In this document: in pieces, positions 21,915 through 47,326 of the stretch
Position numbering within the stretch: the stretch's first letter is position 1
How the letters are laid out: every line of letters starts with the position of its first letter
Origin: Mobula hypostoma
Lineage: Eukaryota
Direction of reading: 5' to 3'
Assembly (NCBI RefSeq): GCF_963921235.1
Contig: NC_086097.1
Coordinates: forward strand, 141,298,001-141,362,000
Length of the DNA stretch: 64,000 nucleotides
Translations under genes and position numbers: made by a program
Notes under the pieces: generated by a model
What the model saw: the letters and a program-made list of their open reading frames with translations, nothing else
Told to the model about the DNA's origin: nothing
The model's database searches: none

Positions 21915-21953
21915 CACAGAGTTGACATGCAACCGGCACCGCTGACAAAAACT
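21915..21953 (+). other. 23-RSS of V2
   Basis: CACAGAG + 23 nt + ACAAAAACT. Confidence 0.95.
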
Positions 21954-22949: not shown

Positions 22950-25100
22950 TTGATGTCTCTGATGTCAACGCCAATCTAGATCACATCTTTCCTCGTACAA
23001 GCAAAGCTGTTGCAGTGATTTGGGGAATAGAAACAGGTGAGGACTGCCCAACAGTCAGATCCAGGCCCAGATGGAGAAGTTCCTAACCAGCTGTTTGTCC
23101 TTGCCCCTGTGTGTTCCTAAATCTTGGCCTGGGGTCACTCTTCCCATCTGGTTGGCCATCCAGGGATTCAACAGACCCTGGAATTCATAAACAGATGATT
23201 TACATAGAAGATATATGTCCCAAGATGTCCACGACTTTATCTCTGCCTGTCCAATTTGTTCCCAGAACGTCACATGTCATAACGAGGTGGGTGGGGGGGG
23301 GGCATTCGGAACGGACCCAAATGCAAGACATAGACACTGAAGTACTAGGGACAGGACTGGGATGCAAGACCTGGGCTAGGATATGGACAGGAAACAGGGA
23401 AACCAGACTAGGAACTATGAACTAGGAGCCTGTCATGGAGTCCGAGCCAGAGGGACAAGGCAAGACAGATAACCTGCAGGGCAACGGCAGAATGGCCTGA
23501 CTAACCCCACAGAGGTGAGGACAAGAAGAGACAAACATTGAAGAATGACAGACAGTTCCATCTCTGCTTCAGGGTTGCTCCGAGTCGCAGTTATGGCCAG
23601 CGACCTTGGCTGGCTGCAGAAACAGCCAGATCCCTACCTAGATCGGAGAGGCTGACGGCCACTCAGCTAGTCCGGGAAGTGGTCGGAACCATACCACAAA
23701 GACAGCTCCGACTACTGACAGCAAGGCTCAATGAGGGGACGGTTCCCCAATGCGGCCTAAAGATGGCAAGTGGCTGCTCTAGCCTTCCACTGGCAGGTTG
23801 CTTCCAGGGGATCGCAACAAGACAAACCAGCAGTCCACAGTCGTCTGCAAGGATACTTATATTCCAAGCCCCAAGTTGGGAATCAGGTGCCTATGATTAA
23901 CCCAACCAAAACAAGGGACGGCTGGAAGACCCGGAGTCCTAAGTCCACAGACCGGACCGTGACCCAGAATGCGGACTTCACGGACTGGACCATGACATCA
24001 CAGCTGCTCACTGCTGGTTTTCCCTACCCACTGCCTGTGGCTCTCTGCTCCAGGTCCAACCTCTCAGTGGATTTCATCACTGGTCTGTGTCCGTCAGATG
24101 GAAACACTATCATCCTGGTGGTTGTGGACCAGTTCTCTAAAGCAGCCCACTTCATTGCTCTCCCCAAGCTCCCATCAGCTCAGGAAACTGCCACTTTCTT
24201 GGTTCAATTTGTGTTCATGCTGCACAGCTTCCCCCGGGACAGCAGGCCTGACTGAGGAGCACATTGTTGGAATGCTTTCTGTTCTCCTTTGGGAGTCACA
24301 GCCACCCTCTCATCACTATTCTACCTGCAATCTAATGGCCATACTGAGAGTGAATGAGGAGCTGGAGACAATCTTGACTCCATGACGTGGAGCTCCCAAC
24401 TCAGAGATTGCCCATAATGAGCTGGACTAGCATGCCCTCCATTCAATGGCAAAATGGATTCCAGCACTGATCTTCCCAGACCGTGATTGACATGGGAGTT
24501 CCTGCTGTTGAACAGTTGGTACAAAGCTGCAAGCACACATGGAGATGGGCCAGGGCTTCCCGGCTGCATACTCAGAAACAATATGCCCAGCAGGATAATC
24601 AGCTCCTCTGAGAGGTGAGGCTTCTCAATCCAGGGAGAAAGCCTGGCTGGTATCTAGGGATCTTCCTTTGAAAGCTGGGAGCCTCAAGGTTGCCCCAGGC
24701 TACCTGGGATTATTCACAGTGGGGAAGGATATCAAGCGATCTTCCTAGAGCCTGTGACTGCAATTATCTGTTAAGATTTACCTCGTATTCCATGCTTGCA
24801 GCTCACACTGGTGACTTCTCCCCACCTTGCTCCAGTTAGACCCTCTCCCTCACTCATCTTGGTGGATGGGTCACTGTTCTATTCCCAGCAGCACCTCCTG
24901 GCATCTCGCCCAGTGTGGGGCAGGGTCCTGCGTCTAGTGGACTGGGAGAGATAGGGCCCAGAGAATCTTTCTTGGGATCCAATTCGTGATATCCTGGACA
25001 AGTCACTCATCCAGGACATCCAGCGGGCACAGGACTGTCGTGCCCCAGGATCTGTGCCTAGTGGTGGGGTGGGATTGCGGGCGTGGTGAAGGTGCTGATC
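22950..25100 (+). mobile_element. Gypsy pol relic (Zn finger, integrase core, chromodomain) split by a solo LTR (copy at about 46280-48430)
   Basis: SVDFITGLCPSDGNTIILVVVDQFSKAAHFIALPKLPSAQETATFLVQFVF; chromodomain LVDWER.GPENLSWDPIRDILD. Confidence 0.85.
23275..23997 (-). mobile_element. Solo LTR, 723 bp, with 5-bp TSD TCACA
   Basis: TGTCAT...ATGACA termini; TCACA at 23270-23274 and 23998-24002. Confidence 0.9.
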
Positions 25101-27286
25101 TGTAAAAACCATGGACTCAGCTGTGGAGTGGGCAGCTGAAAGCGGTCATCAGCAATCACGCTCGTGAGAATGCACATTGCAGACAATTAGGGTTGCGTTG
25201 TAATTTTATTTAACTCCCTTCAGTCTTGTCGAGTCTTGACTGAAGCACAATGACGGCGACACTCCCCCGATTACCTTAGCCAACTTTCCATGATAGAAGA
25301 CTCCAACTTAGATTGACGCCTTAAAGGAGTGGTATAACTTATTATTAAGTTACTGCTTCTGAAGCTCAGTGTCAGCGTTAGATTTTTAGTTTGAATTTTA
25401 GTTTGTAGATCTATTGGCTTCACATTTATTATTTTCCTTTTATTTTGTATAGTTCCTTTAAATTAAAGTTTACCCAGGGGTCAGTGTTGGGACCTCTGTT
25501 ATTAATTATTATGTAAATGATTTGGATGTGAATTTACACAGCACGGTTCACTATACTGTACTCTCAATCTTGGTATCATCCGCAAATTTGCTGATCCAGT
25601 TTAATATCTTGTCATTGAAATCATTACTATAAGTGACCAACAACAAAGGATCAAGCACCGAATCCTGTAGCACAGCACTAGTCACAGGCCTCCAGGCAGA
25701 GAGTCAAACACTAACCACCATTCTCTCGCTTCTTCCGCTAAGCCAACATTGAATCTAACTGACTACTTCATCCTGAATGCCAGGCGACTTAATCTTCTTG
25801 ACGAGACTGCTATGGCGTAATTTATCAAAGGCTCTTCTAAAGACCATTGTGTTCCCTTGTCAAATGCAGCAGAAGAAAGAAGCAATTGGATTTGGATTAA
25901 AAGGAAAGACAACAACTGGGCTGCAAGATGAAGATAGGAGGATATGGAACTGAGGGGGGTGTATCTGGGATGCCAGGTAGCACTGTTGAGCCCTCTGGAG
26001 ACGTTGTGAGCTTATCAACGAAACGTCAAAGATGGCATACTTACCCCCCCCATCACCACTCCAAACCCACCGCCAACATCAAGAGTACCAATTTACCATA
26101 CGGATTGAAACATCAAGTCCTAGTAGCTCTGCTACTTCAACAAACTTCTCGGTAACCTCCCTGAAAAAATCTCTATAAATTAGTTAGACATGACTTACCA
26201 TGCATTAAGCCATATTGTTTATCTCTTTTCAGGCCCTGTCTATACAAACACAGGTACATGTACATCCTATCCATGAGAAAAACTTCTGATAATTTGCGCA
26301 CGACTAATGTCAGGTTCACCAGGCTCTAATTTCCTGTTTATTCTTAGAACGATTCTTAAATGTTAGTGACCCTCCAATCTTCCAGTACCTCACCCATGGG
26401 TATGGATGTTTTAAATATTACTGCCAGGGCCCCTGCAATTTCTGCACTAGCCTCCCACAAGTTTGGAGAGGACACCTCATCAGGCCTTTGGGATTAATTC
26501 ACCCTAAATTCTTCTCAAGACAGCAAGCACTTCCTCTTCTGTAATCAGAACATGGTCCATGATCTCTAGTGTTTTGCCAGATTCTATGGTATCTGTGTCT
26601 GTCTCCTGAGCAAATGCTAACACAAAAATAAAACATTTAATATTTTTCCACATCTCTTTTAGTTCCATACATATATGACCAATTTGATCTTCGAGGGGAC
26701 CAATTTTGTCCCTTGCTATCCTCTTGCTCCGAGTACCTATAGAACCCTTGGATTCTGGTTTACATTGCCTGCTAGAGCAACCACTAATCCCCTTTCAGCC
26801 TTCCTGATCTTTCACTTGTGTTCTTTTGTATGTCTTATATTCTTCAATTGCCCCATTTAACACTAGCTTCGAATACCTGATATGTGCTTCCGTTTTGTTT
26901 ACCAGGTCCTCAATATCCCATGATAGATAAGGATCCCTAAACCTGACAACCTTGCTTTTTATCCTAATAGAAATATACATATTGTGTACTCTCAATACAC
27001 AATTCTGCTGAAGACCACCCACTGCCAGTGTCTCTTTGTTAGAAAACATCCTATCCCAATCCACACCTGGCAGATTGCTTCTGATGCCATCAAAATTACT
27101 CTTCCTCCAGTTTAGAATCTTAATCTGAAAACCAATTCTATCCAATCTCCCTAATTATTTTGAAGTCGATGGAATTTTGATCACTATATCCAAAGTCTTT
27201 CCCTATGTTCACCTCTGTCACCTGCCCTGTCTCATTTCCGGAGAAGAGATCCAATATTGTGCTCCCTTTAGTGGAAATTCTGCTTA

Positions 27287-27908
27287 TAAAGCGGGAGGAA
27301 AAGATGGCAGCGCGCCGCGCATGCGCGGCTCTCCGGTGAAAAATGATGTCGTGAATGTTAAATAGGGGCGTGGACAATTCTGATTTGATAGAGAATGCAC
27401 GTGAAAGCACGGAGGAACATCTGGAGAAATTTCTGAAACGCCCGTCCGCTGCTGTCGTTACTGCGTGGTCGGGAATCTTTCCGGGGGTAGGCCTCAAAAT
27501 CCCCTGCCTTGCCTGCTTTTGGCGACCAAGAAGGAGGTCGAATCGTTCGGACAGAGATGGCGCTCAGTACTCGGTGTCGGAGAGCTGATCAGAGCTCGAA
27601 GTTTTCGGATGACTCATGGTCGGATTGTGGTCGGCATGGCAGGGAGAGTTTTTCTTCCTTCTCTCGTCTGCGTGAGATGTGGGACATTTGAGAAACTTGG
27701 AGCTTTGCTGGACTCACGGACTTCTTCATCAAGTTATGGTATTGTTACACTGTTTGTAACTATATGTATAACTATGTGGTTTTGTCAGTTTTTTCAGTCT
27801 TGGGTTGTCCCGTGTTTTGTGATATCACACCAGAGGAAATAATGTATCATTTCTGAATGCATACATTACTAAATGACAATAAAATGGGACTAGGTGTCTT
27901 CATAATCT
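27287..27908 (+). mobile_element. Short non-autonomous retroelement / SINE-like insertion (copy 50616-51237)
   Basis: CpG-rich 5' end starting AAGATGGCAGCG; 3' end AATAAAA...CATAATCT; interrupts the CR1 frame; no clear TSD. Confidence 0.55.
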
Positions 27909-28626
27909 TATTGATAATGAAACTTTCCTGAACACATTTGACAAACTCTATCTCATCCAGTTCCTTTACACTATGGGAGTCCCAATCAATATGCAGAAAG
28001 CTACAATCACCCACTATTTCAACCTGAACACTAGAGATTTTGCAGATGCTGGAAATCCAGAGTAACACATAAAAAAACTTGGAGGAACTCATGAGGTAAG
28101 AAAAGAAATAAAGCATCAATTCTTCAGGCCAAGACCCTTGATCAAGACCCTTCATGAATCCTGAGGAAGGGTCTCAGCCAAAAACATTGACTGTTTATTC
28201 CTTTTGCAGTTGCTGCCTCCCCTGCTGAGTTACTCTTGCATCTTGTATGTGTTACTGTAACAACCTTGTATTTCTTGCAACTGTTTGCTATCTCCCTATG
28301 ACTTTGTTCATCCAAATCCTGCTTGACTATTAGAAACTCTATAAAGTCCCATTAACATGATCATCCATTTTTTATTCCACAGATTCATGAAAATTGCCTT
28401 GGCAGATGAGCCTTCCGTACATCATCTAAGCATTGGTCTGACGTTATCTCTGATGAGTAATATGAGTACTCCCTCCCCCTTTAATACCTGCTTCTCTGAC
28501 ATGTCTAAATCAGCAGAATGCCAGAACATTGAGCTGTCAGACTTCGCCGTCATGTAACCATGTCTCAATAATGGTTTCAACATCGTAAGTCCACACATGG
28601 CTCCATGCTCTATGTGCATTAGCCTT

Positions 28627-28821
28627 GGGGTGTATGGGGTGACAGGGATGGGTAGCCCCTCTGGTGGGGGAACATATCGCGTCCTTTTCAAGGCAGTTAG
28701 TCCACCTTTGATCCCCACCTAGCACTCAACTCTCACCTGTGGCTCCCCATAGCTGTCTGCACGCGACAACGGCCACACCCCGGGCAACGACTTCGACAAG
28801 CCAGCTAAACCAGGTGAGGGT
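28627..28821 (+). ncRNA. HDV-like self-cleaving ribozyme candidate
   Basis: P1 GGGGUGU/ACACCCC (7 bp), P2 ACUCUCACCUG/CAGGUGAGGGU (11 bp), P3 GGC/GCC, L3 starting UCC, GGGCAAC junction, P4 hairpin, J4/2 GCUAAA; G1 coincides with the element 5' end. Confidence 0.72.
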
Positions 28822-29182
28822 ATCCGACGGGTCTCAAACCCTCAGTGAGATAAAAGAGTTGCCTATCCCAGCATGTGAAGACAGACTCCGGCTGATTGAG
28901 CGGACGAGACCAATAGTCCAATGGTGAGGAAGGCGGTCTCTGCAAGCGTCGTGGAACGTGTAGAGCAGGACAAGACACAGAAGACGTCCTGGTCATCCAC
29001 TGTGCCTAGTCCCATCTCCAGTCGTCTTGACTCTGTCTTGCCACTGGATCCAGATGGGAATTGGGAAGAGGGAGTGAGGCTGACGCTGCACAATTCCCCC
29101 TCACTTAAATCCAAACCACGTGCTAGTCTCGACACCATAATAATGGTGTCGAGGTCCTCAATGACATCGACGATGGATGAAC
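28627..29182 (+). mobile_element. 556-bp non-coding retroelement (RTE-like SINE, inferred) with 11-bp TSD
   Basis: GCATTAGCCTT at 28616-28626 and 29183-29193; no long sense ORF, no tRNA-type head; 3' hairpin CTCGACACCAT-AATA-ATGGTGTCGAG. Confidence 0.85.
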
Positions 29183-32100
29183 GCATTAGCCTTACCTACA
29201 ACCGTCCTTGTCTTGCAATAGATGAAAGTCAGAACATTTATCCACCCTGCTCAATTTTGCAGTTTCCATCTCTGCTTAAAAACGAGAAACGCCGCAAGTG
29301 CTGGAAATCCAAATCAACATCTACAAAATCTTTGATTGTAGTCATGACATCTCTTTTTCTCCACAACCACTTCATTGCTGTCCTGCCACTCTGGATACCA
29401 TCCCTCTTAAATATTAGTTTGAACACTTCCGAGCAGGATTAGCAAACCTTCCTGTAAGGATATTGGTTCCTCACCAGTTTGGGTGAAAACTGTCCTATTT
29501 GCAGAGATCCCACCTGCCCTGGAATGGTGTTCAGTGATCCAAAAAATCTGAAACCCTCTCCAATGCACCATCTGCTTAGTCACATATTAAACTGCACTAT
29601 CTTTCTTATTTTTTACCTCACTAGCATGGATAGCTTCATCTCCATCTTGGAGGTCCTATTTTTCAACTTTGTACCTTATTCCCTGAACTCATTTTGCAAG
29701 TCCTCGTCACTTTTCCTGCTTATATCATTTGTATCAATATATACCATGACTTATGGCTTCTCACACTCTCACTTAAGATGGCTATGGAATCAATTCAAGA
29801 TATGTCTGATCCTCTATACCTGGGAGGCAATATACCATCCAAGAGTCTTTTTCTTTTCTCAGGTCCTCCTGTCCGTTTCACTGACCAGTGCTAACCAATG
29901 ACCTCCATCACTACTACTGGCCTCTTCTTCCTCCCCCACTCACCTTCCTTTCTGAACCAAAGAGACATACTGAGTGCCGAGACCACTGACCACTGTGGTA
30001 GGTCATCTCCCTAAAACTAGATAAAATGATACACTTGTTGAGGGGAATTCCCACAGGGGTATACTACACTGTCTGCCAATACACCTTCCCTCTCTTCATG
30101 ATCACCCAACTACCTGTTTCCAGCAACACTATCTCTCTGTAACTCCTATGAGCCCCTCAATTTTCTGAATGATCTGAAGGTCATCTACCACCAGCTCCAA
30201 TTCCCTAGTACAGTTTGTAAATGTGGATGCACTTATCGCAGGTACAGACATCTCCCTAACTTCCATGTCATGCAAGAGAAGCACATCACTGCTCTAGCTT
30301 CTATTCCCACTGGTCTCTCTGTATAACAATAAAGAAAGAAATTAGAAGAACTTAAACTCGTAGAAGTTTATAAAATCATGAGGGGTATAGAGGTCATAGC
30401 CTGTTCCCCAGGATTGGAGAGGCAAAAACTAGAGGACACTGATACAAGATAATAGAGAAGAGATTTAAAAGAGAACTAAAAGATAATTTCTTTATGTAAA
30501 GGATAGTGAGCTGCCTGAGGAAGTGGTTGAGATGCTGCATTTGTAATATTTAAGATTTATTTGCATAGGTAAACGGAAGGAAAGGGCTTGAAGGACTGTG
30601 ACTCAAATGCAGCAGCTGGAATTAGCAGGGAGGATGCTGTGGTCAGCATGGACCATTTGGGCCGAAAGACCTATATCCAGGCTATGTTGCTCTATGATTT
30701 TATGAAATACAAACAGAAAACGCTTAAAATATTCATATAGACAGATGGAATCTGTGTAAAGAGAAACAGAGTTAACGGTGGTCAAAGATAGCATAAAAGC
30801 AAAATAGAGGGCAAGAAGTCTGCAAAAGGACTCGGACAAATTAGGAGAATGGACAAAAAAGTGGCAGATGGAACACAGTGTAAGGAAGTGTATGGCCATG
30901 CACTTTCGTAGAAGGAATGAAGGCACAGAATATGCTCTAAAGAGAGGGAGAAAGCAGAAACCAAATGTGCAAGAAGACTTGAGAGTTCTGGTGCAGGATT
31001 TCCGAAAGGCTAACTTGCTGTTTGAGTTAGTAGTGGAGAAGACAAATGCAATGACCACAATCATTTCAAGGGGTCTAGAATATATTCAGAATAGAATGGG
31101 AATCAGGTTTAATATCACTGTCATAGGTTGTGGAACTTGTTATTTAGCAGCTGCAGTACAGTGCAATATATAATAAAAACTATAAATTGCAATAAGATAT
31201 ATGTTAAATTAAATATGTAGAGAAAAAGAGAGCAAAGCAAGAAAAAATCAGTGAGGTAGTACATGTGGATTCATTGTCCATTCAGAAATCTAATAAATAA
31301 ATCGTTGTACTGTTGAGTCTTTATAAGAGATCGGTAGACTATATATGGAGTATTGTGATTAATTTTGGCTCCATATCCGAGAAAGAATGTCCTGGCATTA
31401 GAGAGGGTCCAGAGGAGGTTTAAGTGAATGGTTCCAGGAATGAAAGGGTTATCACATAAGGAACATTTGGTGGTACCAGGCCTGTTCTCGCTGGAGCCGA
31501 GAAGACTACGGGATATCTCTTTGAAACCTACTGAATATGTAAAGGCCTGGACGATGAGAGGATTTTCCAGTAGTGGGGGAGTCCAGGACCAAAGGGCACA
31601 GACACATAATAGAACATCATTTCAGAACAGAGACAAGGAGGAATCTCTGAGAATCTGTGAAATTCATTGCCACAAACGGCCATGGAGGCCAAGTTATTGG
31701 GTTTATTGAAGCCGGGGCTGATAGGTATTTGATTAGTCACATTGTCAAAGGGTATTGGGGAAGACGAAAAATGGGGCTGAAAAGGGAAAAGGAAACAGAT
31801 ATGATTAAATGGCCGAGCTGACTCGATGGATCGAATGGCCTAATCCTGCTCCTGTGTTTTATCGTCTTACGGCTGGGAGAGCGATTGCAGTCGGAGCATG
31901 TACACAGGAAGTTTCTGAATCGATTAACCTAACCTGTCCTAAAGGAGTTATCGGAAGGAGAAATTGTTAACGAATGAGTTGATTTAAAGAGAAGGTTTGC
32001 GGGAGGTTTACAACTAGGACTTGGTGAGTTATGGCACTTGGACGTTTACAGCTACAGGAAAGAGAATCCTGGGCATTCGATAAAGGACGTACACTGCCCA

Positions 32101-32814
32101 GGCACCGCGGTAGCGCAGCGATTAGCGCGACGCTATTACAGCTTCCGGTTGTAAATTGTTCCGTGATTGGGTTAGGGTTAATACCGTTTGTCGGGGGTGA
32201 TTGGGCCTACTTCGTGCTGTATCACTAAATAAACAAATTAGATATCGTCCTTTCAAATTTCACAGCGGAAGCCAATGTAAGTTAATATTTACTGACAGGT
32301 TCTGCCCAGCTGGAATAATTAAAACCACGTTAATAGGGAAAGATGAACAGAATCAAGATATGGTGCAGATGGCATTCGGTTCATCAAACATCCCACCCAA
32401 CGGAACGTACACGGAATGCGGTCGCCGCGACGGGGCGGCTGCGAGACAGGTCCAGGGTCGGCACTTTAGGACCGCGTGTGGGGAGGATATCGCTCTCCTT
32501 GCTCTGTCACAGACTCCGGAGACAAAAGATTAGACAAAGTGAAGGCCAAGGTGAGAAACCGGGGGTGTCTGTGAGAATTATCTCCATGTACTCCTGACGT
32601 GTGAAGTCGCCGGGCAAAACCTCAACCCACCTCCCCCGTCCGCCGCTCTGAAACCACTTGCTCCAACTGTGGTGTTCGGCGGGAAATTTCGGGAATGTCA
32701 CAAAACATCGACAAAGGGAGGATAAATATTTTAAATATGTTGACGTGTAACTGAAAAGGCAACTGGCAGGAGGTGACTAATTTGGGGAAAGTTTTGGTAC
32801 GGAACGCTACCGGA

Positions 32815-32965
32815 TCGGTTAGTGTAATGCTATTATAGAGACAGCGACCCAGGTTAAATTCCGTCGTTGTCCTGAAAGGAATTTGTACGTTCTTCCCGTG
32901 ACCGCGTGGGTTTCGTCCGGCTGCTCCGGTTTCCTCCCACTTTCAAAAGACGTAAGGATTAGTAG
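32815..32965 (+). mobile_element. tRNA-derived V-SINE/HE1-like fragment (copy at about 56144-56294)
   Basis: Core GTACGTTCTTCCCGTGACCGCGTGGGTTTC...CTCCGGTTTCCTCCCAC. Confidence 0.6.
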
Positions 32966-32977
32966 CCGCCCAAAGCA

Positions 32978-33075
32978 ACCTACACAAAATGCTGGAGGAA
33001 CTCAGTAGACCAAGCAGCATTTATGGAAAAGAGTAAATAGTCGACGTTTCGGGCCGAAACCCTTTATCAGGACTC
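32978..33075 (-). mobile_element. Penelope terminal fragment with degenerate hammerhead (CUGAUAA) upstream of V3 (copy before V5; remnant at 9764-9800)
   Basis: Matches the terminus of 16436-16570 (AAATGCTGGAGGAACTCAG...GTCGACGTTTCGGGCCGA). Confidence 0.6.
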
Positions 33076-33519
33076 AGATGAACATAATCACAGCCATGGT
33101 GTTGATGGCATTCACTTCATCAAACATCCCACCCAAAGGAAGGGGAGAGGTCAGCGTGAGAAGTCCTTCAGCATCTGAAAATTTCTCCCGTTTGTGGGTT
33201 AGCAGGTTAATTGATCACCTTGATGGAATTGGATGGCCCAAACTTTTGGCCTCGAAAGGCCTGTTATCGTGACGGATTTCTTCATGTTAAGCGAGAACAA
33301 GTTCGAACAGAAAAAAAAATTGTCTAGTGAACTGCTGTGCAATTCTAACAAAATCTCAATTTATGCAAAGGAAATAATGGTGTGTGGTTTTCAAATAGGG
33401 TTCGAAGGCGTGGTCTGTGACACGTTGAGAGAAAGTGGGACGTGAAGCGTGCTGTTATTTATAACTAACCAGACCACGTCCAAATCCGTGTCAAATACAG
33501 TCAGAACTCGACAAACACC

Positions 33520-33943
33520 ATGCGGCTGGGTTGTGTGGCTTTTGTGATACTTTTCCTCCGTTAGTTGATTGATTTTCATCCGTTTACTCTCTATTTGCTT
33601 CAGGCTTTTCAACATGTTCTGAGTTTGATTTTTCTTTCCACAGGCAGATGTCTCGGTGCTGAATTGATACAGTCTCCGATGTCCATCACCAAAAACGTGG
33701 GCAAAACTGCCGTCATGATCTGCGATCTGGGCACAGCGAACACGGACATAATCCACTGGTACCGGCAGCCAGATGGGCAACGCCCGGTCAGGATCCTCTA
33801 TTACAGTAATGGGGTCAACATACGCGACGATGGAATTGATGACAGATTTACAGCGAGAAAAGATCGACAAAAGCAGTATTCTCTAACTGTGGCCCGTCTC
33901 GAGAAAGAGGATTCCGGCACCTATTACTGTGCCTATATAGACC
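33520..33943 (+). CDS. TRGV: TCR gamma-type V segment V3: exons 33520-33559 and 33644-33943
   Basis: Open frame ending YYCAYID; 83/95 mature residues identical to V2; same translation as V5. Confidence 0.88.
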
Positions 33944-33982
33944 CACAAAGTTAAAATTTAACCGGCGCCGCTGACAAAAACT
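33944..33982 (+). other. 23-RSS of V3 (variant heptamer)
   Basis: CACAAAG + 23 nt + ACAAAAACT. Confidence 0.93.
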
Positions 33983-35846
33983 CTTCCTCAGCGTAGAGGT
34001 CACACGAATCATTTCCAACTCAGCGAATTGGCAGCTTATGCCATAAATGCCATCACCTTTCTTCGGATAAAGAACTCTATCCAATTCCACGAAAGTTACC
34101 CGATCAGCCTCATCAACAGTGTATTCGTTTACACCCGTTGCTCGAGAACAGTGAATTGGGAGAGTATTTCCACAGGGTACGAGAGCCAAAACTGGAGACA
34201 ATAGATTTAAAGTGAGAGGGGGAAGTTCTATAACCAATCTGTGTGGTGGATTCTTCAGGGAAAGGGCGGTGGACACAGGCAACAAGCTGCCAGTGGAAGC
34301 AGAGGCAGGATCCATCGAGAGATTTAAAAGTCATTTGGGCATCTACATGGATAAGATAGGTTCAGAGATATACCGGTTAATTGCAGGTAAACGGGACTAG
34401 TTTACGTGGGAAACTTGCTCGGTAAGGACGAGTTAAGCAGAAGGGCCTGATTCTGTGCTGTAGAGCTCAATGGCCCTTAGACTTGTTTTAAATCTCTGCA
34501 CTGTCGCCAGTCAGACTCCTTTATTCCGTGAAAAACAGTCCCGACATATCCGATTGCTAAAACTAAATTCCTCCAATCCCAGAAACATACTTGTGAATTT
34601 TTTCTGCGTCCTCTCTAGTTCAATCACACACAAATAATTAAGCAATAAATACTGAGGAAATGAGGTGAATATCCTTGAAAGTGAGCCCATATGTTCTGGG
34701 AACATTTCAGTGGTGGGTCAACTGAAGTTATACCATTTGGTTGAAGAGCCTGATTGTGGAGGGGTAATACCTGTTGCTGAACCTGGTGGTGTAGTTCTGA
34801 GGCTCCTGTACGTACTTCCTGATGGGAGCAGTGAGAGGAGAGCATGATCTGCAATGTGGGGGAGGGGTGGGGTGGGTGGTGTTTCTGATGACGGATGTTG
34901 CTTTCCTTAAAACATCACTTCTTAAAACATTTCCTCACTGTGGATGTAAGTGATACTGGACTTTAGTCATTAAGGCAGGTCACCATGTTCTTCTGAGGCA
35001 ACAGAATCAGAGAAGTCTGATTGAAGCAGATGGGTACATCAGCCAAAGAGACAGGTTAAAGATCAGTGAATAGTCCCACCAGTTGATTAGCACTGGTCTT
35101 TAGTACTTGGCCAGGTATCATGTCTGGCCTAAATGATTTTCATGGGTTCATCTTGCAGAAGGCTGCCCGCACATCAGCCTCAGAGACTAAAATCACTCGA
35201 TGGTCTGGCACTGTGAGTGTTTGTGATGGTTCTTCCATGTTTTGAAGCTCAATGCAAGCAAAGAAGGCATTCCGTTCATCTGGAAGTGAGCCCTGTTGTC
35301 ACCTTTGTCACTTGATTTTACTTTATAAGAAGTGATACCATTCATGCCCTGCCACAACTATTGACTATCCTTTGGTGATTCAGGTTTAGTCTGGCAAATA
35401 AGGTGGCTTTGCCCATAAGGAGGCTTTTCAGAGAATGTACCAGGACCTTTTGTAAATTTATTGGTCACCAGACTTCAATGCTTCTGATCTGGCCCTCAAC
35501 AAATTGCTGATTTCATGATTTATACAAGGCATCTGGCGGGAGAAAACTCTGATTCAGTTTGTGGGGAGACACTCGTCTACAACTGTTTTTCTCAAGTCCA
35601 TGATGTACGTGCCCATTGAACCTGCATGGTGTAGGTGTATTTATTCAGATCCATAGATGTGTCCTTAAAAATGGCTCAGACCACTCGAAGGATTCCATAT
35701 AGCAATAACCACTCATATGCCTCCCTTGACCATCTCGTTGTTGTCCTCATCTATGGAGATTATATCCAGTTACTTGATTTGCCTCCCTCATAGCTTGACC
35801 TATCCCTCATATGGACATTGGCTTTCAGTGAATAATGTGCAAAGGC

Positions 35847-37027
35847 ACAGGACTCGGATGCAGGACCTGGGCTAGGACATGGACAAGAAACAGGGAAACC
35901 GGACAAGAAACTATGAACTAGGATCCTCTCTTGGGCTCCAAGCCAGAAACTAGACAAGGACCCAGAAACTGGGACTTGCCTCGGTCTCGGGCCCCAGAAC
36001 CAGGCAAGGACATAACATGACTACAGGACTGGAGGCTGGGTCTTGAGGTTTCAGCTTGGAGACAGGCTGGGGTCTTGAGGTTTCAACTTGGAGACAGGCT
36101 GGGGTCTTGAGGCTTGAGCTTGGAGACAGGCTGGGGTTTTGAGCCTTGAGCTTAGACACAGGCTGGGGTCTTGAGGCTGCAGGCTGGGGTCTTGTGTCTT
36201 CAGGCTGCAGGCTGAGAGCTGGGGTCTTGGAATGCGGAGACTGATAACTCGCAGGCTGGAGCTCGAAGACAGACTGGGAACTGTACATCAACATAGAGCC
36301 GGGACTTATCCTTAGACAAGCCGGGACTCATCTTTAACAGGACACCAACATGAGACTGGGCAGAACATAGACATACAGCCGGGATTCAATTTCATCTCCA
36401 CACCAAGGTGGGAAAGGTCCCTCCGTCGGGTAACAGCACATGGCCTGACTTACCCAACAGAGGCAAGGACAAGACAAGACAGATCCCCCCGCAGGACAAC
36501 GGCAGAACGGCCTGACTTATCCCACGGAGGCGAGGATAAGAAGAGACAAACATCGAAGAACGACAGACAGTTCCATCTCTGCTTCGGTGTTGTTCCGAGC
36601 TGCAGTTACGGCCAGCAACCTCAGCTGGCTACGGAAACAGCCGGATCCCTACCTAGATCGGAGTGGCTGATGGCCACTCAGTTGGTCCAAGAAACGGCCA
36701 GAATCCATACCACAACGACAACTCCGACTACTGACAGCAAGGCTCCATGAGGGGATGGTTCCCCAACGCGGCCTCAAGATGGCAAGTGGCCGCTCTAGCC
36801 TTCCACCGGCAGGTTGCTCCCAGGGGATCTTAACAAGACAAACCAGCAGCCCACAGTCGTCCACAAGGCTACTTATATTATAAGCCCCACGGTGGGAATC
36901 AAGTGCCTATGATTAACCCAACCGGAACAAGGGAAGGGACAGCCGGAAGACCCGGAAGACCCGGACTCCTGAGTCCACGGACCGGACCGTGACCCGGAAT
37001 GCGGACTTCGGGGACCGGACCATGACA
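35847..37027 (-). mobile_element. Duplicate of truncated LTR 12518-13701
   Basis: Same sequence apart from small indels. Confidence 0.8.
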
Positions 37028-39761
37028 TCACAGCAGCTCACTGCTGGTTTACTCTACCCACAGCCTGTGCCTCTTTGCCCCAAGTCCCACCTCCCGGTGG
37101 ATTTCATCGCTGGTCTGTGTCCGTCAGAAGGAAACACTATCTTCCTGGTGTTTGTGAACCAGTTCTCTAAAGCAGCCCACTTCATTGCTCTCCCCAAGCT
37201 CCCATCGGCTCAGGAAGCTGCCACTTTCTTAGTTCAGCTTGTGTTCGGGCTGCACAGCTTCCCCCGGGACAGCAGGTCCGACTAAGGAGCACATTTCCTG
37301 TCCCATTGTTGGAATGCTTTCTGTTCTCCTTAGGGATCCACAGCCAACCTTTCATCACTTTTCCACCCGCAATCTAATGGCCAGCTGGAGAGAATGAACA
37401 AGGAGCTGGAGACAATCCTGACTCGATGACCTGGAGCTCCCAACTCAGAGATTGCTCATAATAAGCTGGACTAGCATTGCATGGCAAAATGGATTCCAGC
37501 ACTGATCTTCCCAGACCGTGACTGACATGGGAGTTCCTGCTGTTGAACAGTTGGTACAAAGCTGCAAGCACACATGGAGATGGGCCAGGGCTTCCCTGCT
37601 GCAGACTCAGAAACAATATGCCCAGCAGGATTATCAGCTCCTCCGATAGGTGAGGCTTCTCAATCCAGGAAGAAGGCCTGGCTGGTATCTAGAGATCTTC
37701 CTTTGAAAGCTGGGAGACGCAAGGTTGCCCCAGGCTACCTGGGACTATTCACAGTGGGGAATGCTATCAATCGATCTTCCTAGAGACTGTGCCTGCAATT
37801 ATCTGTTAAGCTTTACCTAGTATTCCATGTTTGCAGCTCACACTGGTGACTTCCTCCCACCTTGCTCCAGTTAGACCCTCTCCCTCACTCATCTTGGTGG
37901 ATGGGTCACTTGTCTATTCCGTGCAGCGCCCCCTGGCATCTTGCACAGTGTGGGGCAGGGTCCAGCACCTAGCTGACTGGGAGAGATAGGGCCCAGAGAA
38001 TCGTTCTTGGGATCCAATTCGTGCCATCTTGGACAAGTCACTCATCCAGGACCTCCAGCGGGCACAGTCTCTCGTGCCCCTGGAGCTGTACCTCGTGGTG
38101 GGGTGGGATTGCGGGGATGGTGAGGGTGGTGATCTGTAAAAACCATGGACTCTGCTGTGGAGTGGGCAGCTGAAAGCGGTCATCAGCAATCACGCTCGTG
38201 AGAATGCACATTGCAGACAATTAGGGTTGCATTGTCGTTTTATTTAACTCCCTTCAGTCTTGTCAAGTCTTGACTGAAGCACAACGATGGCGACACCCTC
38301 CTGATTACCTTAGCCCACTTTCTAAGATACAAGACTCCAATTTAGATTGATGCCTTAAAGGAGTGGTACTAACCTACTATTAAGTTTCTCCTTCTGAAGC
38401 TCAGTGTCAGCATTAGATTTTTAGTTTGAATTTTAGTTTGTAGCCCTATTGGCTTCGCATTTATTATTTTCCTTTTATTTTGTACCGTGCTTATTATATT
38501 TCAGTTTACCCAGGGGTCAGTGTTGGGACTTCTGTCATTAATTATTCTGTAAATGATTTGGATGCGAATATATACAGCACAATGTTCACTATACCCTTAG
38601 GCTTGGTATCATCTGCAAATTTGCAGAACCAGTTTAATATATTGTCATCTAAATCATTAATATAAGTGACCTACAACAATGCATGAAGCACCGATTCCTG
38701 CAGCACAGCACTAGTCACAGACCTCCAGGCAGAGAGTCAAACACTAACCGCCGTTCTCTGGCTTCTTCCGCTAAGCCAACATCGGAATGAACTGACTACC
38801 TCATCCTGAATGCCAGGCGACTTAATCTTCTTGACGAGTCTGCCATGTCATAATTTATCAAAGGCTTTTCTGAAGACCATTTTGTTCCCTTCATCAAACT
38901 TCTTGGTAACCTCCTTAAAAAAATTCCCAATAAATTAGTTAGACATGACTTACCATGCATTAAGCCATATTGCTTAACTCTTTTCAGGCCCTTTCTATCC
39001 AAACACTGGTACATTAACATCCTATCCATTAGAAAAGCTTCCGATAATTTACCCACGACTAATGTCAGGTTCACCAGGCTCTAATTTCCTGTTTATTCTT
39101 TGAACCATTCTTAAATGTTAGCGACCCTCCAGTCCTCCAGTACCTCACCCATGGGTCAGGATGATTTAAATATTTCTGCCAGGACCCCTGTAATTTCTGC
39201 ACTGGCCTCCCACAAGTTTGAGAGGACACCTCGAGAGGGCTTTGGGACTTAATCACCCTTAATTCTTCTCAAAACAGCAAGCAATTCCTCTTCTGTAATC
39301 AGAACATGGTCCATGACCTCTAGTGTTTTGCCAGATTCTATGGTATCTGTGTCTGTCTCCTGAGTAAATACAAACACAAAAATAAAGCATTTAATATTTT
39401 TCCATATCTCTTTAAGCTTCATGCATATATGACCAACTTGATCTTCAAGGGGACCAATTTTGTCCCTTGTTATCCTCTGGCTCCCAGTACCTATAGAACC
39501 CTTGGATTCTGGTTTACCTTGTCTGCTAGAACAACCACTTATCCCTTTTCAGCCTTCCTGATCTTTCGCTTGTGTTCTCCTTCATTTCATATATTCCTCA
39601 AGTGTCCCATTTAGAGTGAGAGGGGAAAGATCTATAAGAGACCTGTGTGGTAGGTTCTTCAGTGAAAGGGCGGTGGGTACAGGCAACAAACAGCCAGAGG
39701 AAGAGATAGAGGCAGGAACCATCGAGAGATTTAAAATTCATTTGGGCATCTACATGGATAT

Positions 39762-42623
39762 AACAGGAATTCTGCAGATGCTGGAAATTCAAGCAACACA
39801 CGTCTAAGTTGCTGGTGAACGCAGCAGGCCAAGCAGCATCTATAGGAAGAGGCGCAGTCGACGTTTCAGGCCGAGACCCTTCGTCAGGACTAACTGAAGG
39901 AAGAGTGAGTAAGGGATTTGAAAGCTGGAGGAGGAGGGGGAGATGCAAAATGATAGGAGAAGACAGGAGGGGGAGGGATAGAGCCGAGAGCTGGACAGGT
40001 GATAGGCAAAAGGGGATACGAGAGGATCATGGGACAGGAGGTCCGGGAAGAAAGACGGGGGGGGGTGACCCAGAGGATGGGCAAGAGGTATATTCAGAGG
40101 GACAGAGGGAGAAAAAGGAGAGTGAGAGAAAGAATGTGTGCATAAAAATGAGTAACAGATGGGGTACGAGGGGGAGGTGGGGCCTAGCGGAAGTTAGAGA
40201 AGTCAATGTTCATGCCATCAGGTTGGAGGCTACCCAGACGGAATATAAGGTGTTGTTCCTCCAACCTGAGTGTGGCTTCATCTTTACAGTAGAGGAGGCC
40301 GTGGACAGACATGTCAGAATGGGAATGGGATGTGGAATTAAAATGTGTGGCCACTGGGAGATCCTGCTTTCTCTGGCGGACAGAGCGTAGATGTTCAGCA
40401 AAGCAGTCTCCCAGTCTGCGTCGGGTCTCACCAATATATAAAAGGCCACATCGGGAGCACCGGACGCAATATATCACCCCAGTCGACTCACAGGTGAAGT
40501 GATGCCTCACCTGGAAGGACTGTTTGGGGCCCTGAATGGTGGTAAGGGAGGAAGTGTAAGGGCATGTGTAGCACTTGTTCCGCTTACACGGATAAGTGCC
40601 AGGAGGGAGATCAGTGGGGAGGGATGGGGGGGACGAATGGACAAGGGAGTTGTGTAGGGAGCGATCCCTGCGGAATGCAGAGAGAGGGGGGGGAGGGAAA
40701 GATGTGCTTAGTGGTGGGATCCCGTTGGAGGTGGCGGAAGTTACGGAGAATAATATGTTGGACCCGGAGGCTGGTGGGGTGGTAGGTGAGGACCAGGGGA
40801 ACCCTATTCCTAGTGGGGTGGTGGGAGGATGGAGTGAGAGCAGATGTACATGAAATGGGGGAGATGCGTTTAAGAGTAGAGTTGATAGTGGAGGAAGGGA
40901 AGCCCCTTTCTTTAAAAAATGAAGACATCTCCCTCGTCCTAGAATGAAAAGCCTCATCCTGAGAGCAGATGCGGCGGAGACGGAGGAATTGCGAGAAGGG
41001 GATGGCGTTTTTGCAAGAGACAGGGTGAGAAGAGGAATAGTCCAGATAGCTGTGAGAGTCAGTAGGCTTATAGTAGACATCAGTGGATAAGCTGTCTCCA
41101 GAGACAGAGACAGAAAGATCTAGAAAGGGGAGGGAGGTGTCGGAAATGGACCAGGTAAACTTGAGGGCAGGGTGAAAGTTGGAGGCAAAGTTAATAAAGT
41201 CAACGAGTTCTGCATGCTTATCCACTGATGTCTACTATAAGCCTACTGATGCAGAACTCGTTGACTTTATTAACTTTGCCTCCAACTTTCACCCTGCCCT
41301 CAAGTTTACCTGGTCCATTTCCGACACCTCCCTCCCCTTTCTAGATCTTTCTGTCTCTGTCTCTGGAGACAGCTTATCTACTGTTGTCTACTGTAAGCCT
41401 ACTGACTCTCACAGCTATCTGGACTATTCCTCTTCTCACCCTGTCTCTTGCAAAAACGCCATCCCCTTCTCGCAATTCCTCCGTCTCCACTGCATCTGCT
41501 CTCAGGATGAGGCTTTTCATTCTAGGACGAGGGAGATGTCTTCATTTTTTAAAGAAAGGGGCTTCCCTTCCTCCACTATCAACTCTGCTCTTAAACGCAT
41601 CTCCCCCATTTCACGTACATCTGCTCTCACTCCATCCTCCCACCACCCCACTAGGAATAGGGTTCCCCTGGTCCTCACCTACCACCCCACCAGCCTCCGG
41701 GTCCAACATATTATTCTCCGTAACTTCCGCCACCTCCAACGGGATCCCACCACTAAGCACATCTTTCCCTCCCCCCCTCTCTCTGCATTCCGCAGGGATC
41801 GCTCCCTACACAACTCCCTTGTCCATTCGTCCCCCCCCCCCATCCCTCCCCACTGATCTCCCTCCTGGCACTTATCCGTGTAAGCAGAACAAGTGCTACA
41901 CATACCCTTACACTTCCTCCCTTACCACCATTCAGGGCCCCAAACAGTCCTTCCAGGTGAGGCATCACTTCACCTGTGAGTCGACTGGGGTGATATATTG
42001 CGTCCGGTGCTCCCGATGTGGCCTTTTATATATTGGTGAGACCCGACGCAGACTGGGAGACCGCTTTGCTGAACATCTACGCTCTGTCCGCCAGAGAAAG
42101 CAGGATCTCCCAGTGGCCACACATTTTAATTCCACATCCCATTCCCATTCTGACATGTCTATCCACGGCCTCCTCTACTGTAAAGATGAAGCCACACTCA
42201 GGTTGGAGGAACAACACCTTATATTCCGTCTGAGTAGCCTCCAACCTGATGGCATGAACATTGACTTCTCTAACTTCCGCTAGGCCCCACCTCCCCCTCG
42301 TACCCCATCTGTTACTCTTTTTTATGCACACATTCTTTCTCTCACTCTCCTTTTTCTCCCTCTGTCCCTCTGAATATACCTCTTGCCCATCCTCTGGGTC
42401 ACCCCCCCCCCCCGTCTTTCTTCCCGGACCTCCTGTCCCATGATCCTCTCATATCCCCTTTTGCCTATCACCTGTCCAGCTCTCGGCTCTATCCCTCCCC
42501 CTCCTGTCTTCTCCTATCATTTTGCATCTCCCCCTCCCCCTCCAGCTTTCAAATCCCTTACTCACTCTTCCTTCAGTTAGTCCTGACAAAGGGTCTCGGC
42601 CTGAAACGTCGACTGCGCCTCTT
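39762..42623. mobile_element. Duplicate of the palindromic Penelope element
   Basis: Same arms and 15-bp TSD; homopolymer length changes shift the ORFs. Confidence 0.92.
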
Positions 42624-44819
42624 CATCTACATGGATATGAAAGGTTTAGAGAAAAACAGGTGAAATGCAGGTAAACGGGACTGGTTTACGTGGGAAACTT
42701 GCTCGGTAAGGACGAGTTAGGCTGAAGGGCCTAATTCTGTGCTGTAGAGCTCAATGGCCCTTAGAATTGTTTTAAATCTCCGTACTGTCACTAGTCAGAC
42801 TCCTTTATTCCGTGGAAAACAATCACGACGTGTCCAATCGCTATAACTACAATTCTCCAATCCCAGAAACATACCTGTAAATCTTTTCTGCATCCTCTCT
42901 AGTTCATTCACATACAAATAATTAAGCAATAAATACTAAGAAAATGAGGTGAATATCCTTGACAGTGAGCCCATATGTTGTGGGAACATTTCAGTGATGG
43001 GTCAAGTGAAGTTACACAATTTGGTTCAAGAGCCTGATTGTGGAGGGGTAATACCTGTTGGTGAACCTGGTGGTGTAGTTCTGAGGCTCCTGTCCGTACT
43101 TCCTGATGGGAGCAGTGAGAGGAGAGCATGATCTGCAATGTGGTGGAGGGGTGGGGTGGGTGGTGTTTCTGATGACGGATGTTGCTTTCCTTAAAACATC
43201 ACTTCTTAAAACATTTCCTCACTGTGGATGTAAGTGATACTGGACTTTAGTCATTGAGGCAGGTCACCATGTTCCTCTGAGGCACCAGAATCAGAGAAGT
43301 CTGATTGAAGCAGATGGGTACATCAGCCAAAGACACAGGTTAAAGATCAGTGAACAGTCCAGCCAGTTGATTAACACTGGTCTTTAGTACTTGGCCAGGT
43401 ATCCTGTCTGGGCTGGATGATTTTCATGGGTTCATCTTGCAGAAGGCTGCCCGCACATCAGCCTCAGAGACTAAAATCACTCGATCGTCTGGCGCTGTGA
43501 GTGTTTGTGATGGTTCCTCCATGTTTTGACGGTCGAAGGAAGCACAGACTGCATTGCGTTCATCTGGAAGTGAGTCCTGTTGTCACCTTTGTCACTTGAT
43601 TTTACTTCATAAGAAATGATAGCATTCAAGCCCTGCCACAACTATTGACTATCCTTTGTTGATTCAGGTTTCGTCTGGGAAATAAGGAGGCTTTGCCCAT
43701 AAGGAGGCTTTCCAGAGAATGTACCAGGACCTCCTGTAACTTTATTGATCACCAGACTTGAATGTCTCTGATCTGACCCTCAGCAAATTGCTGTTTTCGT
43801 GGTTCATACGAGGCATCTGGCGGGAGAAGACTCTGAATGAGTTTGTGGGAGACACTCGTCTACAACTGTTTTTCTCAAGTCCATGATGTAGGTGCCCATT
43901 GAACCTACATGGTGTAGGTGTATTTATTCAGATCCATAGATGTGTCCTTGAAAATGGCTCAGACCACTCGTAGGATTTCCATATAGCAATAACCACTCAT
44001 ATGCCTCCCTCGACCACCACGTTGTTGTCCTTATCTCTGGAGATTATATCCAGTTCCTTGATTTGCCTCCCTCATAGCTTGACCTATCCCTCATACGGAT
44101 ATTGGCTTTCAGGGAATAATGTGCAAAGGCACCCTGGGCCCTCTGAACATACACACCTTGCAAACTGCCATCATTTGAAAGAAAGCTACTATTAAACGGG
44201 ATAGGATGACATCATATTTTGTACTGTTTATTCCCTTCAGCAACAAATATTCATTTAGATACTACAGTGTGGGGTGGGGGAAGAATGACCTGTCAGTGCA
44301 CCGCAGTGGCTGCCAGGCCAGTCGGAGTATGGCCGATTCTGTGTCTCAACAGGGAAAGGTAAAATCAGGTAGACTCAGACGAACAGCATCACAGCCATGG
44401 TGTTGATGGCATTCGGTTCATCAAACATCCCACCCAAAGGAAGGGCAGAAGTCAGCGTGAGAAGTCCTTCAGCATCTGAAAATTTCTCCTGTTTGCGGGT
44501 TAGCAGGTTAATTGATCACATTGATGGAATTGGATGACCCGGGCTTGTTGGCCCCGAAAGGCCTGTTACCGTGACGGATTTCTTCATGTTAAGCGAGAGC
44601 AAGTTCGAACCCAAAAAGTTCGTCTTATGAACTGATGTGCGATTCTAACAAAATCTCATTTTATACAGAGGAAACAATAGTGTGTCGTTTTCCAATGGGG
44701 TTGGAAGGCGTGGTCTGTGACACGTTGAGAGAAAGTGGGACGTGAAGCGTGCTGTTATTTATAACTAGCCAGGCCACGTCTAAATCCGTGTCAAATACAG
44801 TCACAACTCGACAAACACC

Positions 44820-45243
44820 ATGCGGCTGGGTTGCGTGGCTTTTGTGATACTTTTCCTCCGTTAGTTGATTGATTTTCATCCATTTACTCTCTGTTTGCTT
44901 CAGACTTTTAAACATGTTCTGACTTTGATTTCTGTTTCCACAGGCAGATGTCTCAGTGCTGAATTGATACAGTCTCCGATGTCCATCACCAAATCGCTGG
45001 GCAAAACTGCCGTCATGAAATGCGATCTGGGCACAGTGAACACGGAGAATATCTTTTGGTACCGGCAGCCAGATGGGCAACGGCCGGTCAGGATCCTCTA
45101 TTACAATAATGGGGGTAACGTACGCGACGATGGAATTGATGACAGATTTACAGCGAGAAATGATCGACAAAAACAGTATTCTCTAACTGTGACCCGTCTC
45201 GAGAAAGAGGATTCCGGCACCTATTACTGTGCCTATATAGACC
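44820..45243 (+). CDS. TRGV: TCR gamma-type V segment V4 (duplicate of V2): exons 44820-44859 and 44944-45243
   Basis: Same translation as V2, offset 23329 nt. Confidence 0.87.
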
Positions 45244-45282
45244 CACAGAGTTGACATGCAACCGGCACCGCTGACAAAAACT
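45244..45282 (+). other. 23-RSS of V4
   Basis: CACAGAG + 23 nt + ACAAAAACT. Confidence 0.95.
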
Positions 45283-46603: not shown

Positions 46604-47326
46604 TGTCATAACGAGGTGGGTGGGGGGGGGGCATTCGGAACGGACCCAAATGCAAGACATAGACACTGAAGTACTAGGGACAGGACTGGGATGCAAGACC
46701 TGGGCTAGGATATGGACAGGAAACAGGGAAACCAGACTAGGAACTATGAACTAGGAGCCTGTCATGGAGTCCGAGCCAGAGGGACAAGGCAAGACAGATA
46801 ACCTGCAGGGCAACGGCAGAATGGCCTGACTAACCCCACAGAGGTGAGGACAAGAAGAGACAAACATTGAAGAATGACAGACAGTTCCATCTCTGCTTCA
46901 GGGTTGCTCCGAGTCGCAGTTATGGCCAGCGACCTTGGCTGGCTGCAGAAACAGCCAGATCCCTACCTAGATCGGAGAGGCTGACGGCCACTCAGCTAGT
47001 CCGGGAAGTGGTCGGAACCATACCACAAAGACAGCTCCGACTACTGACAGCAAGGCTCAATGAGGGGACGGTTCCCCAATGCGGCCTAAAGATGGCAAGT
47101 GGCTGCTCTAGCCTTCCACTGGCAGGTTGCTTCCAGGGGATCGCAACAAGACAAACCAGCAGTCCACAGTCGTCTGCAAGGATACTTATATTCCAAGCCC
47201 CAAGTTGGGAATCAGGTGCCTATGATTAACCCAACCAAAACAAGGGACGGCTGGAAGACCCGGAGTCCTAAGTCCACAGACCGGACCGTGACCCAGAATG
47301 CGGACTTCACGGACTGGACCATGACA
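46604..47326 (-). mobile_element. Duplicate solo LTR with TCACA TSD
   Basis: Offset 23329 nt from 23275-23997. Confidence 0.9.

What the first reader, a model, noticed from the sequence alone, without database searches (positions are those of the whole stretch)
34031..34107. Unequal-crossover breakpoint of a 23.3-kb duplication mapped to 77 bp just behind an RSS
V3 matches V5 through the gene, the RSS and up to 34107. Its flank matches the V1 flank from 34031 onward (last V1/V3 mismatch 10701/34030; first V3/V5 mismatch 34108/57437). V3 is therefore a V5 gene on a V1 flank, as expected for non-allelic homologous recombination between V1 and V5 3' flanks. The window starts about 50 nt after the nonamer, which raises the speculative possibility of a germline RAG-initiated break. 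The event turns three V genes into five.
Basis: partly seen in the sequence, partly recalled or inferred. Interest (0 to 1): 0.72.

Follow-up and report, generated by a model that had tools for sequence, protein, structure and literature searches.

The report
Recent 23-kb V-gene duplication junction
A devil-ray T-cell-receptor V-gene array carries a very young 23.3-kb tandem duplication whose join lies in a 77-base stretch shared by two older repeat copies, which is the ordinary way such gene arrays grow.

Summary
Window 10702-34107 and 34031-57436 are two tandem copies (offset 23,329) that differ at only 11 of 23,410 alignment columns, which amounts to six events including one substitution. 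Identity falls to 87% left of 34031 (V1 vs V3) and 81% right of 34107 (V3 vs V5). Both ends of the duplication map to the same paralogous 77-bp tract, which is identical in V1, V3 and V5. V3 is therefore a clean one-switch hybrid: V5 gene, RSS and 48 nt of flank, then V1 flank. This is the signature of one homology-directed unequal exchange between two older direct repeats (about 4.4 kb, 77-99% identical per 100 bp). The tract ties for second-longest exact match in that homology. All five V genes are intact, V2=V4 and V3=V5.

Nothing supports a RAG-initiated break. The RSS and the 87 bp after the cleavage site are unconverted V5 sequence, the join is seamless, and no cryptic heptamer lies nearby.

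The reads test was inconclusive. Only k=31 contigs were available, and they cannot bridge 77 shared bases or give copy number. An assembly artefact is unlikely but not excluded.

This is an ordinary mechanism in a new place, of low to moderate interest.

The parts
34031..34107 (+). Junction tract of the duplication: 77 bases identical in V1, V3 and V5. The exchange happened somewhere inside it.
10702..10778 (+). Copy of the 77-bp tract behind V1, one of the two parental exchange sites
57360..57436 (+). Copy of the 77-bp tract behind V5, the other parental exchange site
10702..34030 (+). Duplication copy A (23,329 bp): V1 flank, V-less X-Y' unit, V2, long spacer, V3 gene with RSS
34031..57359 (+). 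Duplication copy B (23,329 bp): same content, carrying V4 and V5. It differs from copy A by six events.
10191..10653 (+). V1: split leader (ATG 10191), V exon 10315-10614, 23-RSS 10615-10653. Intact.
21491..21953 (+). V2: intact V gene with 23-RSS 21915-21953
33520..33982 (+). V3: intact V gene identical to V5, 23-RSS 33944-33982. This is the hybrid unit (V5-type gene, V1-type flank).
44820..45282 (+). V4: identical to V2, 23-RSS 45244-45282
56849..57311 (+). V5: intact V gene, 23-RSS 57273-57311
8055..12420 (+). Older direct repeat around V1 that served as homology for the exchange (77-99% identical to the V5 repeat per 100 bp)
54030..59750 (+). Older direct repeat around V5, partner of the V1 repeat. 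It carries two extra insertions at about 55770-56420 and 57830-58920.
36698..42403 (+). Span in copy B holding all six differences from copy A: +C at 36698; a 5-bp duplication and a 9-bp repeat-number change at 36935-36942; G8 vs G7 at 40686; T vs G at 42340; C12 vs C10 at 42402-42403

Best explanation
This is a real, very young tandem segmental duplication in a translocon-type T-cell-receptor V array of a devil ray. The ancestral chromosome read V1 - V2 - V5. V1 and V5 each sit in an older direct repeat, about 4.4 kb alignable and 23.3 kb apart. A misaligned homologous exchange between the V5 repeat on one chromatid and the V1 repeat on the other resolved inside a 77-bp tract of perfect identity 48 nt behind the RSS nonamer. 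The exchange could have been an unequal crossover or an unequal sister-chromatid exchange. The product is V1 - V2 - [V5 gene/V1 flank = V3] - V2' (V4) - V5. The event added exact extra copies of two functional V genes with promoter, RSS and flank. It doubles their dosage but adds no new specificity. Shown: the anatomy of the product. Inferred: the kind of exchange, its germline timing, and that the assembly is right.
For: There are two copies at offset 23,329 with 11 of 23,410 differing columns, against 13% and 19% divergence immediately outside. Both identity boundaries fall at the same paralogous site, 10701/34030 and 34108/57437. One exchange requires that and independent events would not give it. 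The switch is single and clean, with no mosaic. V1 and V5 lie in direct repeats with alignable homology from 8055-12420 to 54030-59750. The tract ties for second among exact matches in that register, 107, 77 and 77 bp and then 59 or less. It also forms a local identity peak: 96% in its 100-bp window against 87% and 81% in the neighbouring windows. The six differences are mostly of the fast-mutating kind (homopolymer and short-repeat length) plus one substitution, as expected for a young pair. Window 1-9760 is an older paralogue of 19458-32436 at about 89-91%, so the array has duplicated with a similar period before. A 64-kb window without gaps through many near-identical repeats points to a long-read assembly (inference). 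In such an assembly a 77-bp overlap cannot create a false join.
Against: No independent molecule was seen to span the junction. The only data served were k=31 contigs of one sample, and these break at every paralogue branch (pieces 127-280 nt). They cannot bridge 77 shared bases or give copy number. The copy-B form of the 36698 indel was not seen in any run, while the copy-A form was seen in two, so some differences between copies may be consensus errors. The surrounding identity (81-96%) is below what classical mammalian NAHR substrates have, so a replication-based template switch on the same homology would give the same product.
Confidence: 0.75

Rival explanations
1. Assembly artefact: the animal has only V1 - V2 - V5, and the assembler went round the 23.3-kb loop once too often through the shared 77-bp tract. 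The few differences between copies would be consensus errors or heterozygous sites.
For: The copies are nearly identical. Most differences are indels in homopolymers or short repeats, typical of long-read consensus error. At 36698 only the copy-A form was seen in read-derived contigs. No spanning molecule could be shown.
Against: There are no gaps, and the join sits inside 81-87% identical flanks. Long-read overlap assemblers would not accept a 77-bp overlap there. A loop walked twice should give identical copies, yet the two differ by a 5-bp duplication, a 9-bp repeat-number change and a substitution. The junction has exactly the form a real unequal exchange leaves.
Confidence: 0.1
2. Real duplication made by a replication-based template switch (break-induced or fork-stalling type) that re-primed on the homeologous V1 flank, rather than by a crossover.
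For: Identity around the tract is only 81-96%. This resembles repeat-mediated rearrangements between diverged repeats, which are often ascribed to template switching (my knowledge, not tested). The product is indistinguishable by sequence.
Against: The junction shows none of the usual marks of such events: no inserted or templated extra bases, no complexity, and homology of 77 bp rather than 2-15 bp.
Confidence: 0.12
3. A germline RAG cut at the V5 (or V1) RSS started the event, and homologous repair on the misaligned paralogue finished it.
For: The tract lies 48 nt behind the nonamer and 87 nt behind the RAG cleavage site. Cartilaginous fish carry germline-joined Ig genes that have been ascribed to RAG activity in germ cells (PMC2193156).
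Against: V3 keeps V5-type bases at all ten V1/V5-diagnostic sites from the heptamer to 34030. The DNA on both sides of the would-be cut is therefore unconverted. The RSSs of V1, V3 and V5 are intact, with no lost or added bases. No heptamer-like site with at most one mismatch lies in or beside the tract. The tract is one of three longest identity tracts, so its choice needs no extra cause. By my estimate a random break in the 4.4-kb homology lands this close to the RSS about one time in ten.
Confidence: 0.03
4. An old duplication kept identical by gene conversion.
For: Mosaic similarity among V1, V2 and V5 shows past conversion or exchange in this array.
Against: A 23.4-kb uninterrupted identity tract whose two ends coincide at one paralogous site is not what patchy conversion gives.
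Confidence: 0.02

Closest known systems
NAHR/unequal-crossover copy-number changes in antigen-receptor loci, e.g. human TRGV gene-number polymorphism (loss of V4-V5, extra V3P) and IGLJ-C2/3 cassette duplications
   Same: Tandem gain of whole V (or J-C) units between directly repeated paralogous units. The new copies are near-identical, and the mechanism is ascribed to homologous misalignment (PMC7349638; bioRxiv 10.1101/2022.07.20.500849).
   Different: Here the host is a ray, the unit is a two-gene 23.3-kb block, and the breakpoint is resolved to 77 bp. Polymorphism in the population is untested. The surrounding identity (81-96%) is lower than in the >99% human IGLJ-C homology region.
Repeat-mediated rearrangements between diverged interspersed repeats (Alu-Alu type)
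   Same: A hybrid repeat at the junction, with the breakpoint in a short identity tract inside 80-90% identical repeats (my knowledge).
   Different: The repeats here are locus-specific V-gene units of several kb, not interspersed elements.
Germline RAG activity in cartilaginous fish (germline-joined Ig genes)
   Same: Same animal group, and an RSS lies close by (PMC2193156).
   Different: Germline-joined genes have lost their RSSs and show V-J or V-D-J fusion. Here all RSSs are intact and nothing is joined at a heptamer.

Membership tests
Tandem segmental duplication by non-allelic homologous exchange | Two directly oriented paralogous repeats at the ends of the duplicated segment | tested here: met
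   8055-12420 and 54030-59750 are colinear on the same strand, 77-99% identical per 100 bp
Tandem segmental duplication by non-allelic homologous exchange | A hybrid repeat at the junction with one switch of parentage | tested here: met
   V3 unit: 0 differences from V5 to the left and 0 from V1 to the right. The opposite comparisons give 122/911 and 75/395 differing columns.
Tandem segmental duplication by non-allelic homologous exchange | Both ends of the duplication map to the same paralogous position | tested here: met
   Boundaries 10701/34030 and 34108/57437 flank one 77-bp tract in all three copies
Tandem segmental duplication by non-allelic homologous exchange | Breakpoint in a tract of perfect identity long enough for homologous pairing | tested here: inconclusive
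   The tract is 77 bp and ties for second-longest in the homology block. The minimal tract needed in rays is unknown, and the surrounding identity is lower than in classical cases.
Tandem segmental duplication by non-allelic homologous exchange | Junction and doubled copy number present in the organism's DNA | tested here: inconclusive
   Only k=31 contigs of one sample were served. None bridges the tract and there is no copy-number calibration.
RAG-mediated germline rearrangement | Break at the heptamer/coding border, or at a cryptic RSS at the junction | tested here: not met
   The junction is 87-164 bp from the heptamer border. No heptamer-like site with at most one mismatch lies in or next to the tract.
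RAG-mediated germline rearrangement | Loss of the RSS, or end processing (deleted or added bases) at the join | tested here: not met
   The RSSs of V1, V3 and V5 are intact and the join is seamless
Microhomology-mediated replicative rearrangement | Junction microhomology of a few bases, often with inserted or templated bases | tested here: not met
   77 bases of identity and no extra bases
Germline T-cell-receptor V gene segment | Split leader, V-set domain with the conserved Cys, Trp and Cys, and a 23-spacer RSS | tested here: met
   Pfam V-set E=4.8e-15. Open frames with the conserved Cys, the WYRQ Trp and the YYC Cys in all five genes. Heptamer, 23 nt, nonamer. No J segment in the window.
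TCR gamma V (TRGV) specifically | Linkage to TRGJ-TRGC, or clear best similarity to known TRGV | tested here: inconclusive
   PDB and Atlas searches give V domains of several chain types, and the protein search gave one unnamed relative. Unchecked scan notes place TCR gamma V genes 246 and 439 kb upstream on the same piece. J and C lie outside the window.

The most novel reading that the evidence does not exclude
In a cartilaginous fish, where RAG is thought to have acted in germ cells, a RAG nick or break at a V-gene RSS triggered the misaligned homologous repair that duplicated the block. RAG would then be a driver of V-array expansion in the germline.
Probability: 0.03. Interest if true: 0.7.

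Novelty: new member of a known kind. Interest (0 to 1): 0.25.

Why it matters
This is a clean, base-resolved example of how antigen-receptor V arrays grow by unequal homologous exchange between their own older repeat units, caught almost at birth in an elasmobranch. It gives a ready copy-number marker for the ray's TCR locus: a junction-specific PCR between V3/V5-type and V1-flank-type bases. It also offers a natural test of whether doubling a V gene doubles its use in the repertoire. It does not change what is known about the mechanism.

Tried and rejected
**Reads test.** Contigs of four runs of one sample were laid on 31300-37200.
- The pieces were 127-280 nt and broke at paralogue branches, so none bridges the tract.
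- Depth sums include other paralogues and give no copy number.
- I tried to use depths of paralogue-specific contigs as an internal standard. I dropped that because V1- and V2-type contigs were 2-4 times deeper than the duplicated body, which shows further family members outside the window.

**Second run search.** I searched a 61-mer centred on the only substitution (42340) to see whether both variants exist in reads. The words are held by runs of at least eight organisms, so the site lies in a widely shared mobile element and the test says nothing.

**Chain type.** The protein search gave one unnamed hit. PDB and Atlas searches returned mixed V domains.

**Antisense ORF over the junction (33848-34315).** It has no Pfam family and I treat it as chance.

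**CTCF-like site behind the RSS.** Other notes of the scan report one in other V families. The best match here has 4 of 14 mismatches, so it is not claimed.

**Shark TRG locus paper (PMC2689029).** It is not held.

**Homogenisation by gene conversion.** Rejected because the two ends coincide.

Full report
**What is there**

The window has no gaps. It is a higher-order repeat array. One element (X) recurs six times at spacings of 11173, 8284, 15045, 8284 and 15730 bp, and a V-gene region recurs five times at 11300 and 12029 bp.

An ungapped comparison at offset 23,329 is 100% identical over long stretches. A self-BLAST gives one 24.7-kb hit. The gapped alignment of 9802-34497 to 33135-57828 splits into three parts:

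| Part | Differing columns | Identity |
|---|---|---|
| Up to 34030 | 122 of 911 | 86.6% |
| Duplicated body | 11 of 23,410 | 99.95% |
| From 34108 | 75 of 395 | 81.0% |

The last V1/V3 mismatch is 10701/34030 and the first V3/V5 mismatch is 34108/57437. In the five-way alignment, V1, V3 and V5 are identical over the 77 bases, while V2/V4 differ at 7 of them.

**The genes**

Each of the five units holds an intact V gene:
- a 40-nt leader part;
- an 84-nt intron;
- a V exon with the conserved Cys, the WYRQ Trp and the YYC Cys;
- a 23-spacer RSS, with heptamer CACAGAG (V1, V2, V4) or CACAAAG (V3, V5) and nonamer ACAAAAACT.

Pfam gives V-set at E=4.8e-15. There is no J segment in the window, so this is a translocon-type V array. 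Earlier unchecked scan notes call the genome a devil ray and place TCR gamma V genes upstream on the same piece. My own searches could not fix the chain type. V2=V4 and V3=V5 are identical from promoter to flank, because none of the six differences lies near a gene.

**How the junction formed**

V1 and V5 sit in older direct repeats that align from 8055-12420 to 54030-59750, with two insertions on the V5 side. Identity is 88-99% upstream of the genes, with two lower 100-bp windows where the repeat edge or an indel interrupts the alignment. It is 85-94% over the genes and 77-87% in the 3' flank. The 100-bp window holding the tract peaks at 96%.

In that register the longest exact matches are 107, 77 and 77 bp, and then 59 bp or less. 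The junction tract is one of the two 77-mers. With uniform 12% divergence, a 77-bp run would be expected 0.009 times in the 1.4-kb gene block. Identity in the array is therefore patchy, probably from earlier conversion, and the exchange used one of the patches.

Three features together are what one misaligned homologous exchange leaves:
- a single clean switch of parentage;
- both duplication ends at the same paralogous site;
- a seamless join.

Patchy conversion or a microhomology join would not give these. A replication-based template switch on the same homology cannot be told apart by sequence. Window 1-9760 is an older, 89-91% identical paralogue of 19458-32436, so the array has duplicated with a similar period before.

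**Age**

The copies differ by one substitution (G/T at 19013/42340) and five length changes:
- one C versus two at 13369/36698;
- a 5-bp duplication at 13605-13616/36935-36942;
- a 9-bp repeat-number change at the same place;
- G7/G8 at 17360/40686;
- C10/C12 at 19075/42402.

One substitution in 23.4 kb is 4.3e-5 per site, with a Poisson 95% range of 1e-6 to 2.4e-4. At mutation rates of 7e-10 to 1e-9 per site per unit time (values recalled from memory, not tested), that is roughly 2-3 x 10^4 units, with a range from below 10^3 to 2 x 10^5.

A second organism's runs hold 0.27-0.29 of the stretch's 31-mers, against 0.62-0.66 for the likely source sample. By my rough estimate that implies about 2.6% divergence, hundreds of times more than between the two copies. 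The event is therefore probably specific to the species or population.

**Is it real?**

- The contigs match the assembly exactly over, for example, 34085-34264 in all four runs.
- The pieces are 127-280 nt and break at every paralogue branch.
- No 31-mer is specific to the junction, so nothing can bridge 77 shared bases.
- The depths are sums over paralogues. V1- and V2-type contigs were several times deeper than the duplicated body, which shows more family members elsewhere.
- The copy-A form of the 36698 indel was seen in two runs. The copy-B form was seen in none, so some differences may be consensus errors.

A search with a 61-mer around the substitution hit runs of many organisms, because the site lies in a shared mobile element.

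I rate an artefact as unlikely, about 0.1, for three reasons:
- A gap-free 64-kb stretch through such repeats implies long reads.
- Long-read assemblers would not join on a 77-bp overlap inside 81-87% identical flanks.
- A loop walked twice should give identical copies.

**The RAG idea**

The RAG cleavage site (33943/33944) is 87 bp before the tract. V3 keeps the V5 base at every V1/V5-diagnostic site from the heptamer to 34030. The RSSs are intact, and no cryptic heptamer lies in or beside the tract.

Germline RAG action has a precedent in this animal group (PMC2193156). Nothing here calls for it, and by my estimate the tract's nearness to the RSS is a roughly one-in-ten coincidence.

**Comparison and verdict**

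Gain and loss of V or J-C units by homologous misalignment is well known. Examples are the human TRGV gene-number polymorphism (PMC7349638) and IGLJ-C cassette duplications ascribed to NAHR (bioRxiv 10.1101/2022.07.20.500849).

This is a new, well-resolved instance in a ray, not a new kind of event. It doubles two V genes without adding diversity.

Noticed in passing
window 21029-22361 (and its copy 44358-45690); empty sites 1548-1563 and 60214-60229: The V2/V4 gene lies in a 1301-bp cassette (promoter, leader, intron, V exon, RSS, about 390 bp of flank) flanked by 16-nt direct repeats, GGTAAAATCAGGTAGA and GGGAAAATCAGTTAGA. Paralogous sites elsewhere in the array carry one copy of the 16-mer and no cassette. 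Homology to the V1/V3/V5 gene regions stops exactly at the repeats, and there is no poly-A tail. This looks like a duplicative insertion of a whole V cassette with a 16-bp target-site duplication, by an unknown mechanism.
   Followed up: partly
window 1-9760 vs 19458-32436: This is an older paralogous block, colinear and 89-91% identical, that lacks the V2 cassette and carries an extra LINE fragment. The array has duplicated with a similar two-unit period before.
   Followed up: partly
window 34105; also 33668, 33732-33733, 33748: Read-derived contigs of the likely source sample carry letters that no copy in the window has, for example T at 34105 inside the 77-bp tract and C at 33668 in the V exon. 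These could come from the other haplotype or from further family members outside the window.
   Followed up: no
window 5546-7902 (-), 16858-18956 (both strands), 23770-24255 (+): The spacers hold mobile-element remains: a reverse-transcriptase ORF (RVT_1, E=1.9e-29), an inverted pair of ORFs with a weak GIY-YIG endonuclease match (Penelope-like by my reading), and a weak integrase-core fragment.
   Followed up: partly
window 42310-42370: The 31-mers of this 61-base stretch are held by sequencing runs of at least eight differently coded organisms, so it belongs to a repeat shared well beyond this species.
   Followed up: no
window 33983-34183 and the same places behind V1, V2 and V5: Other V arrays of this genome are noted by the scan as having a CTCF-like site behind the RSS. 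This V family has no good match there: the best has 4 mismatches in 14. A nearly invariant 17-nt block (CAGCGTAGAGGTCACAC; A/G at position 7, C/G at position 18, just after it) does follow the nonamer.
   Followed up: partly
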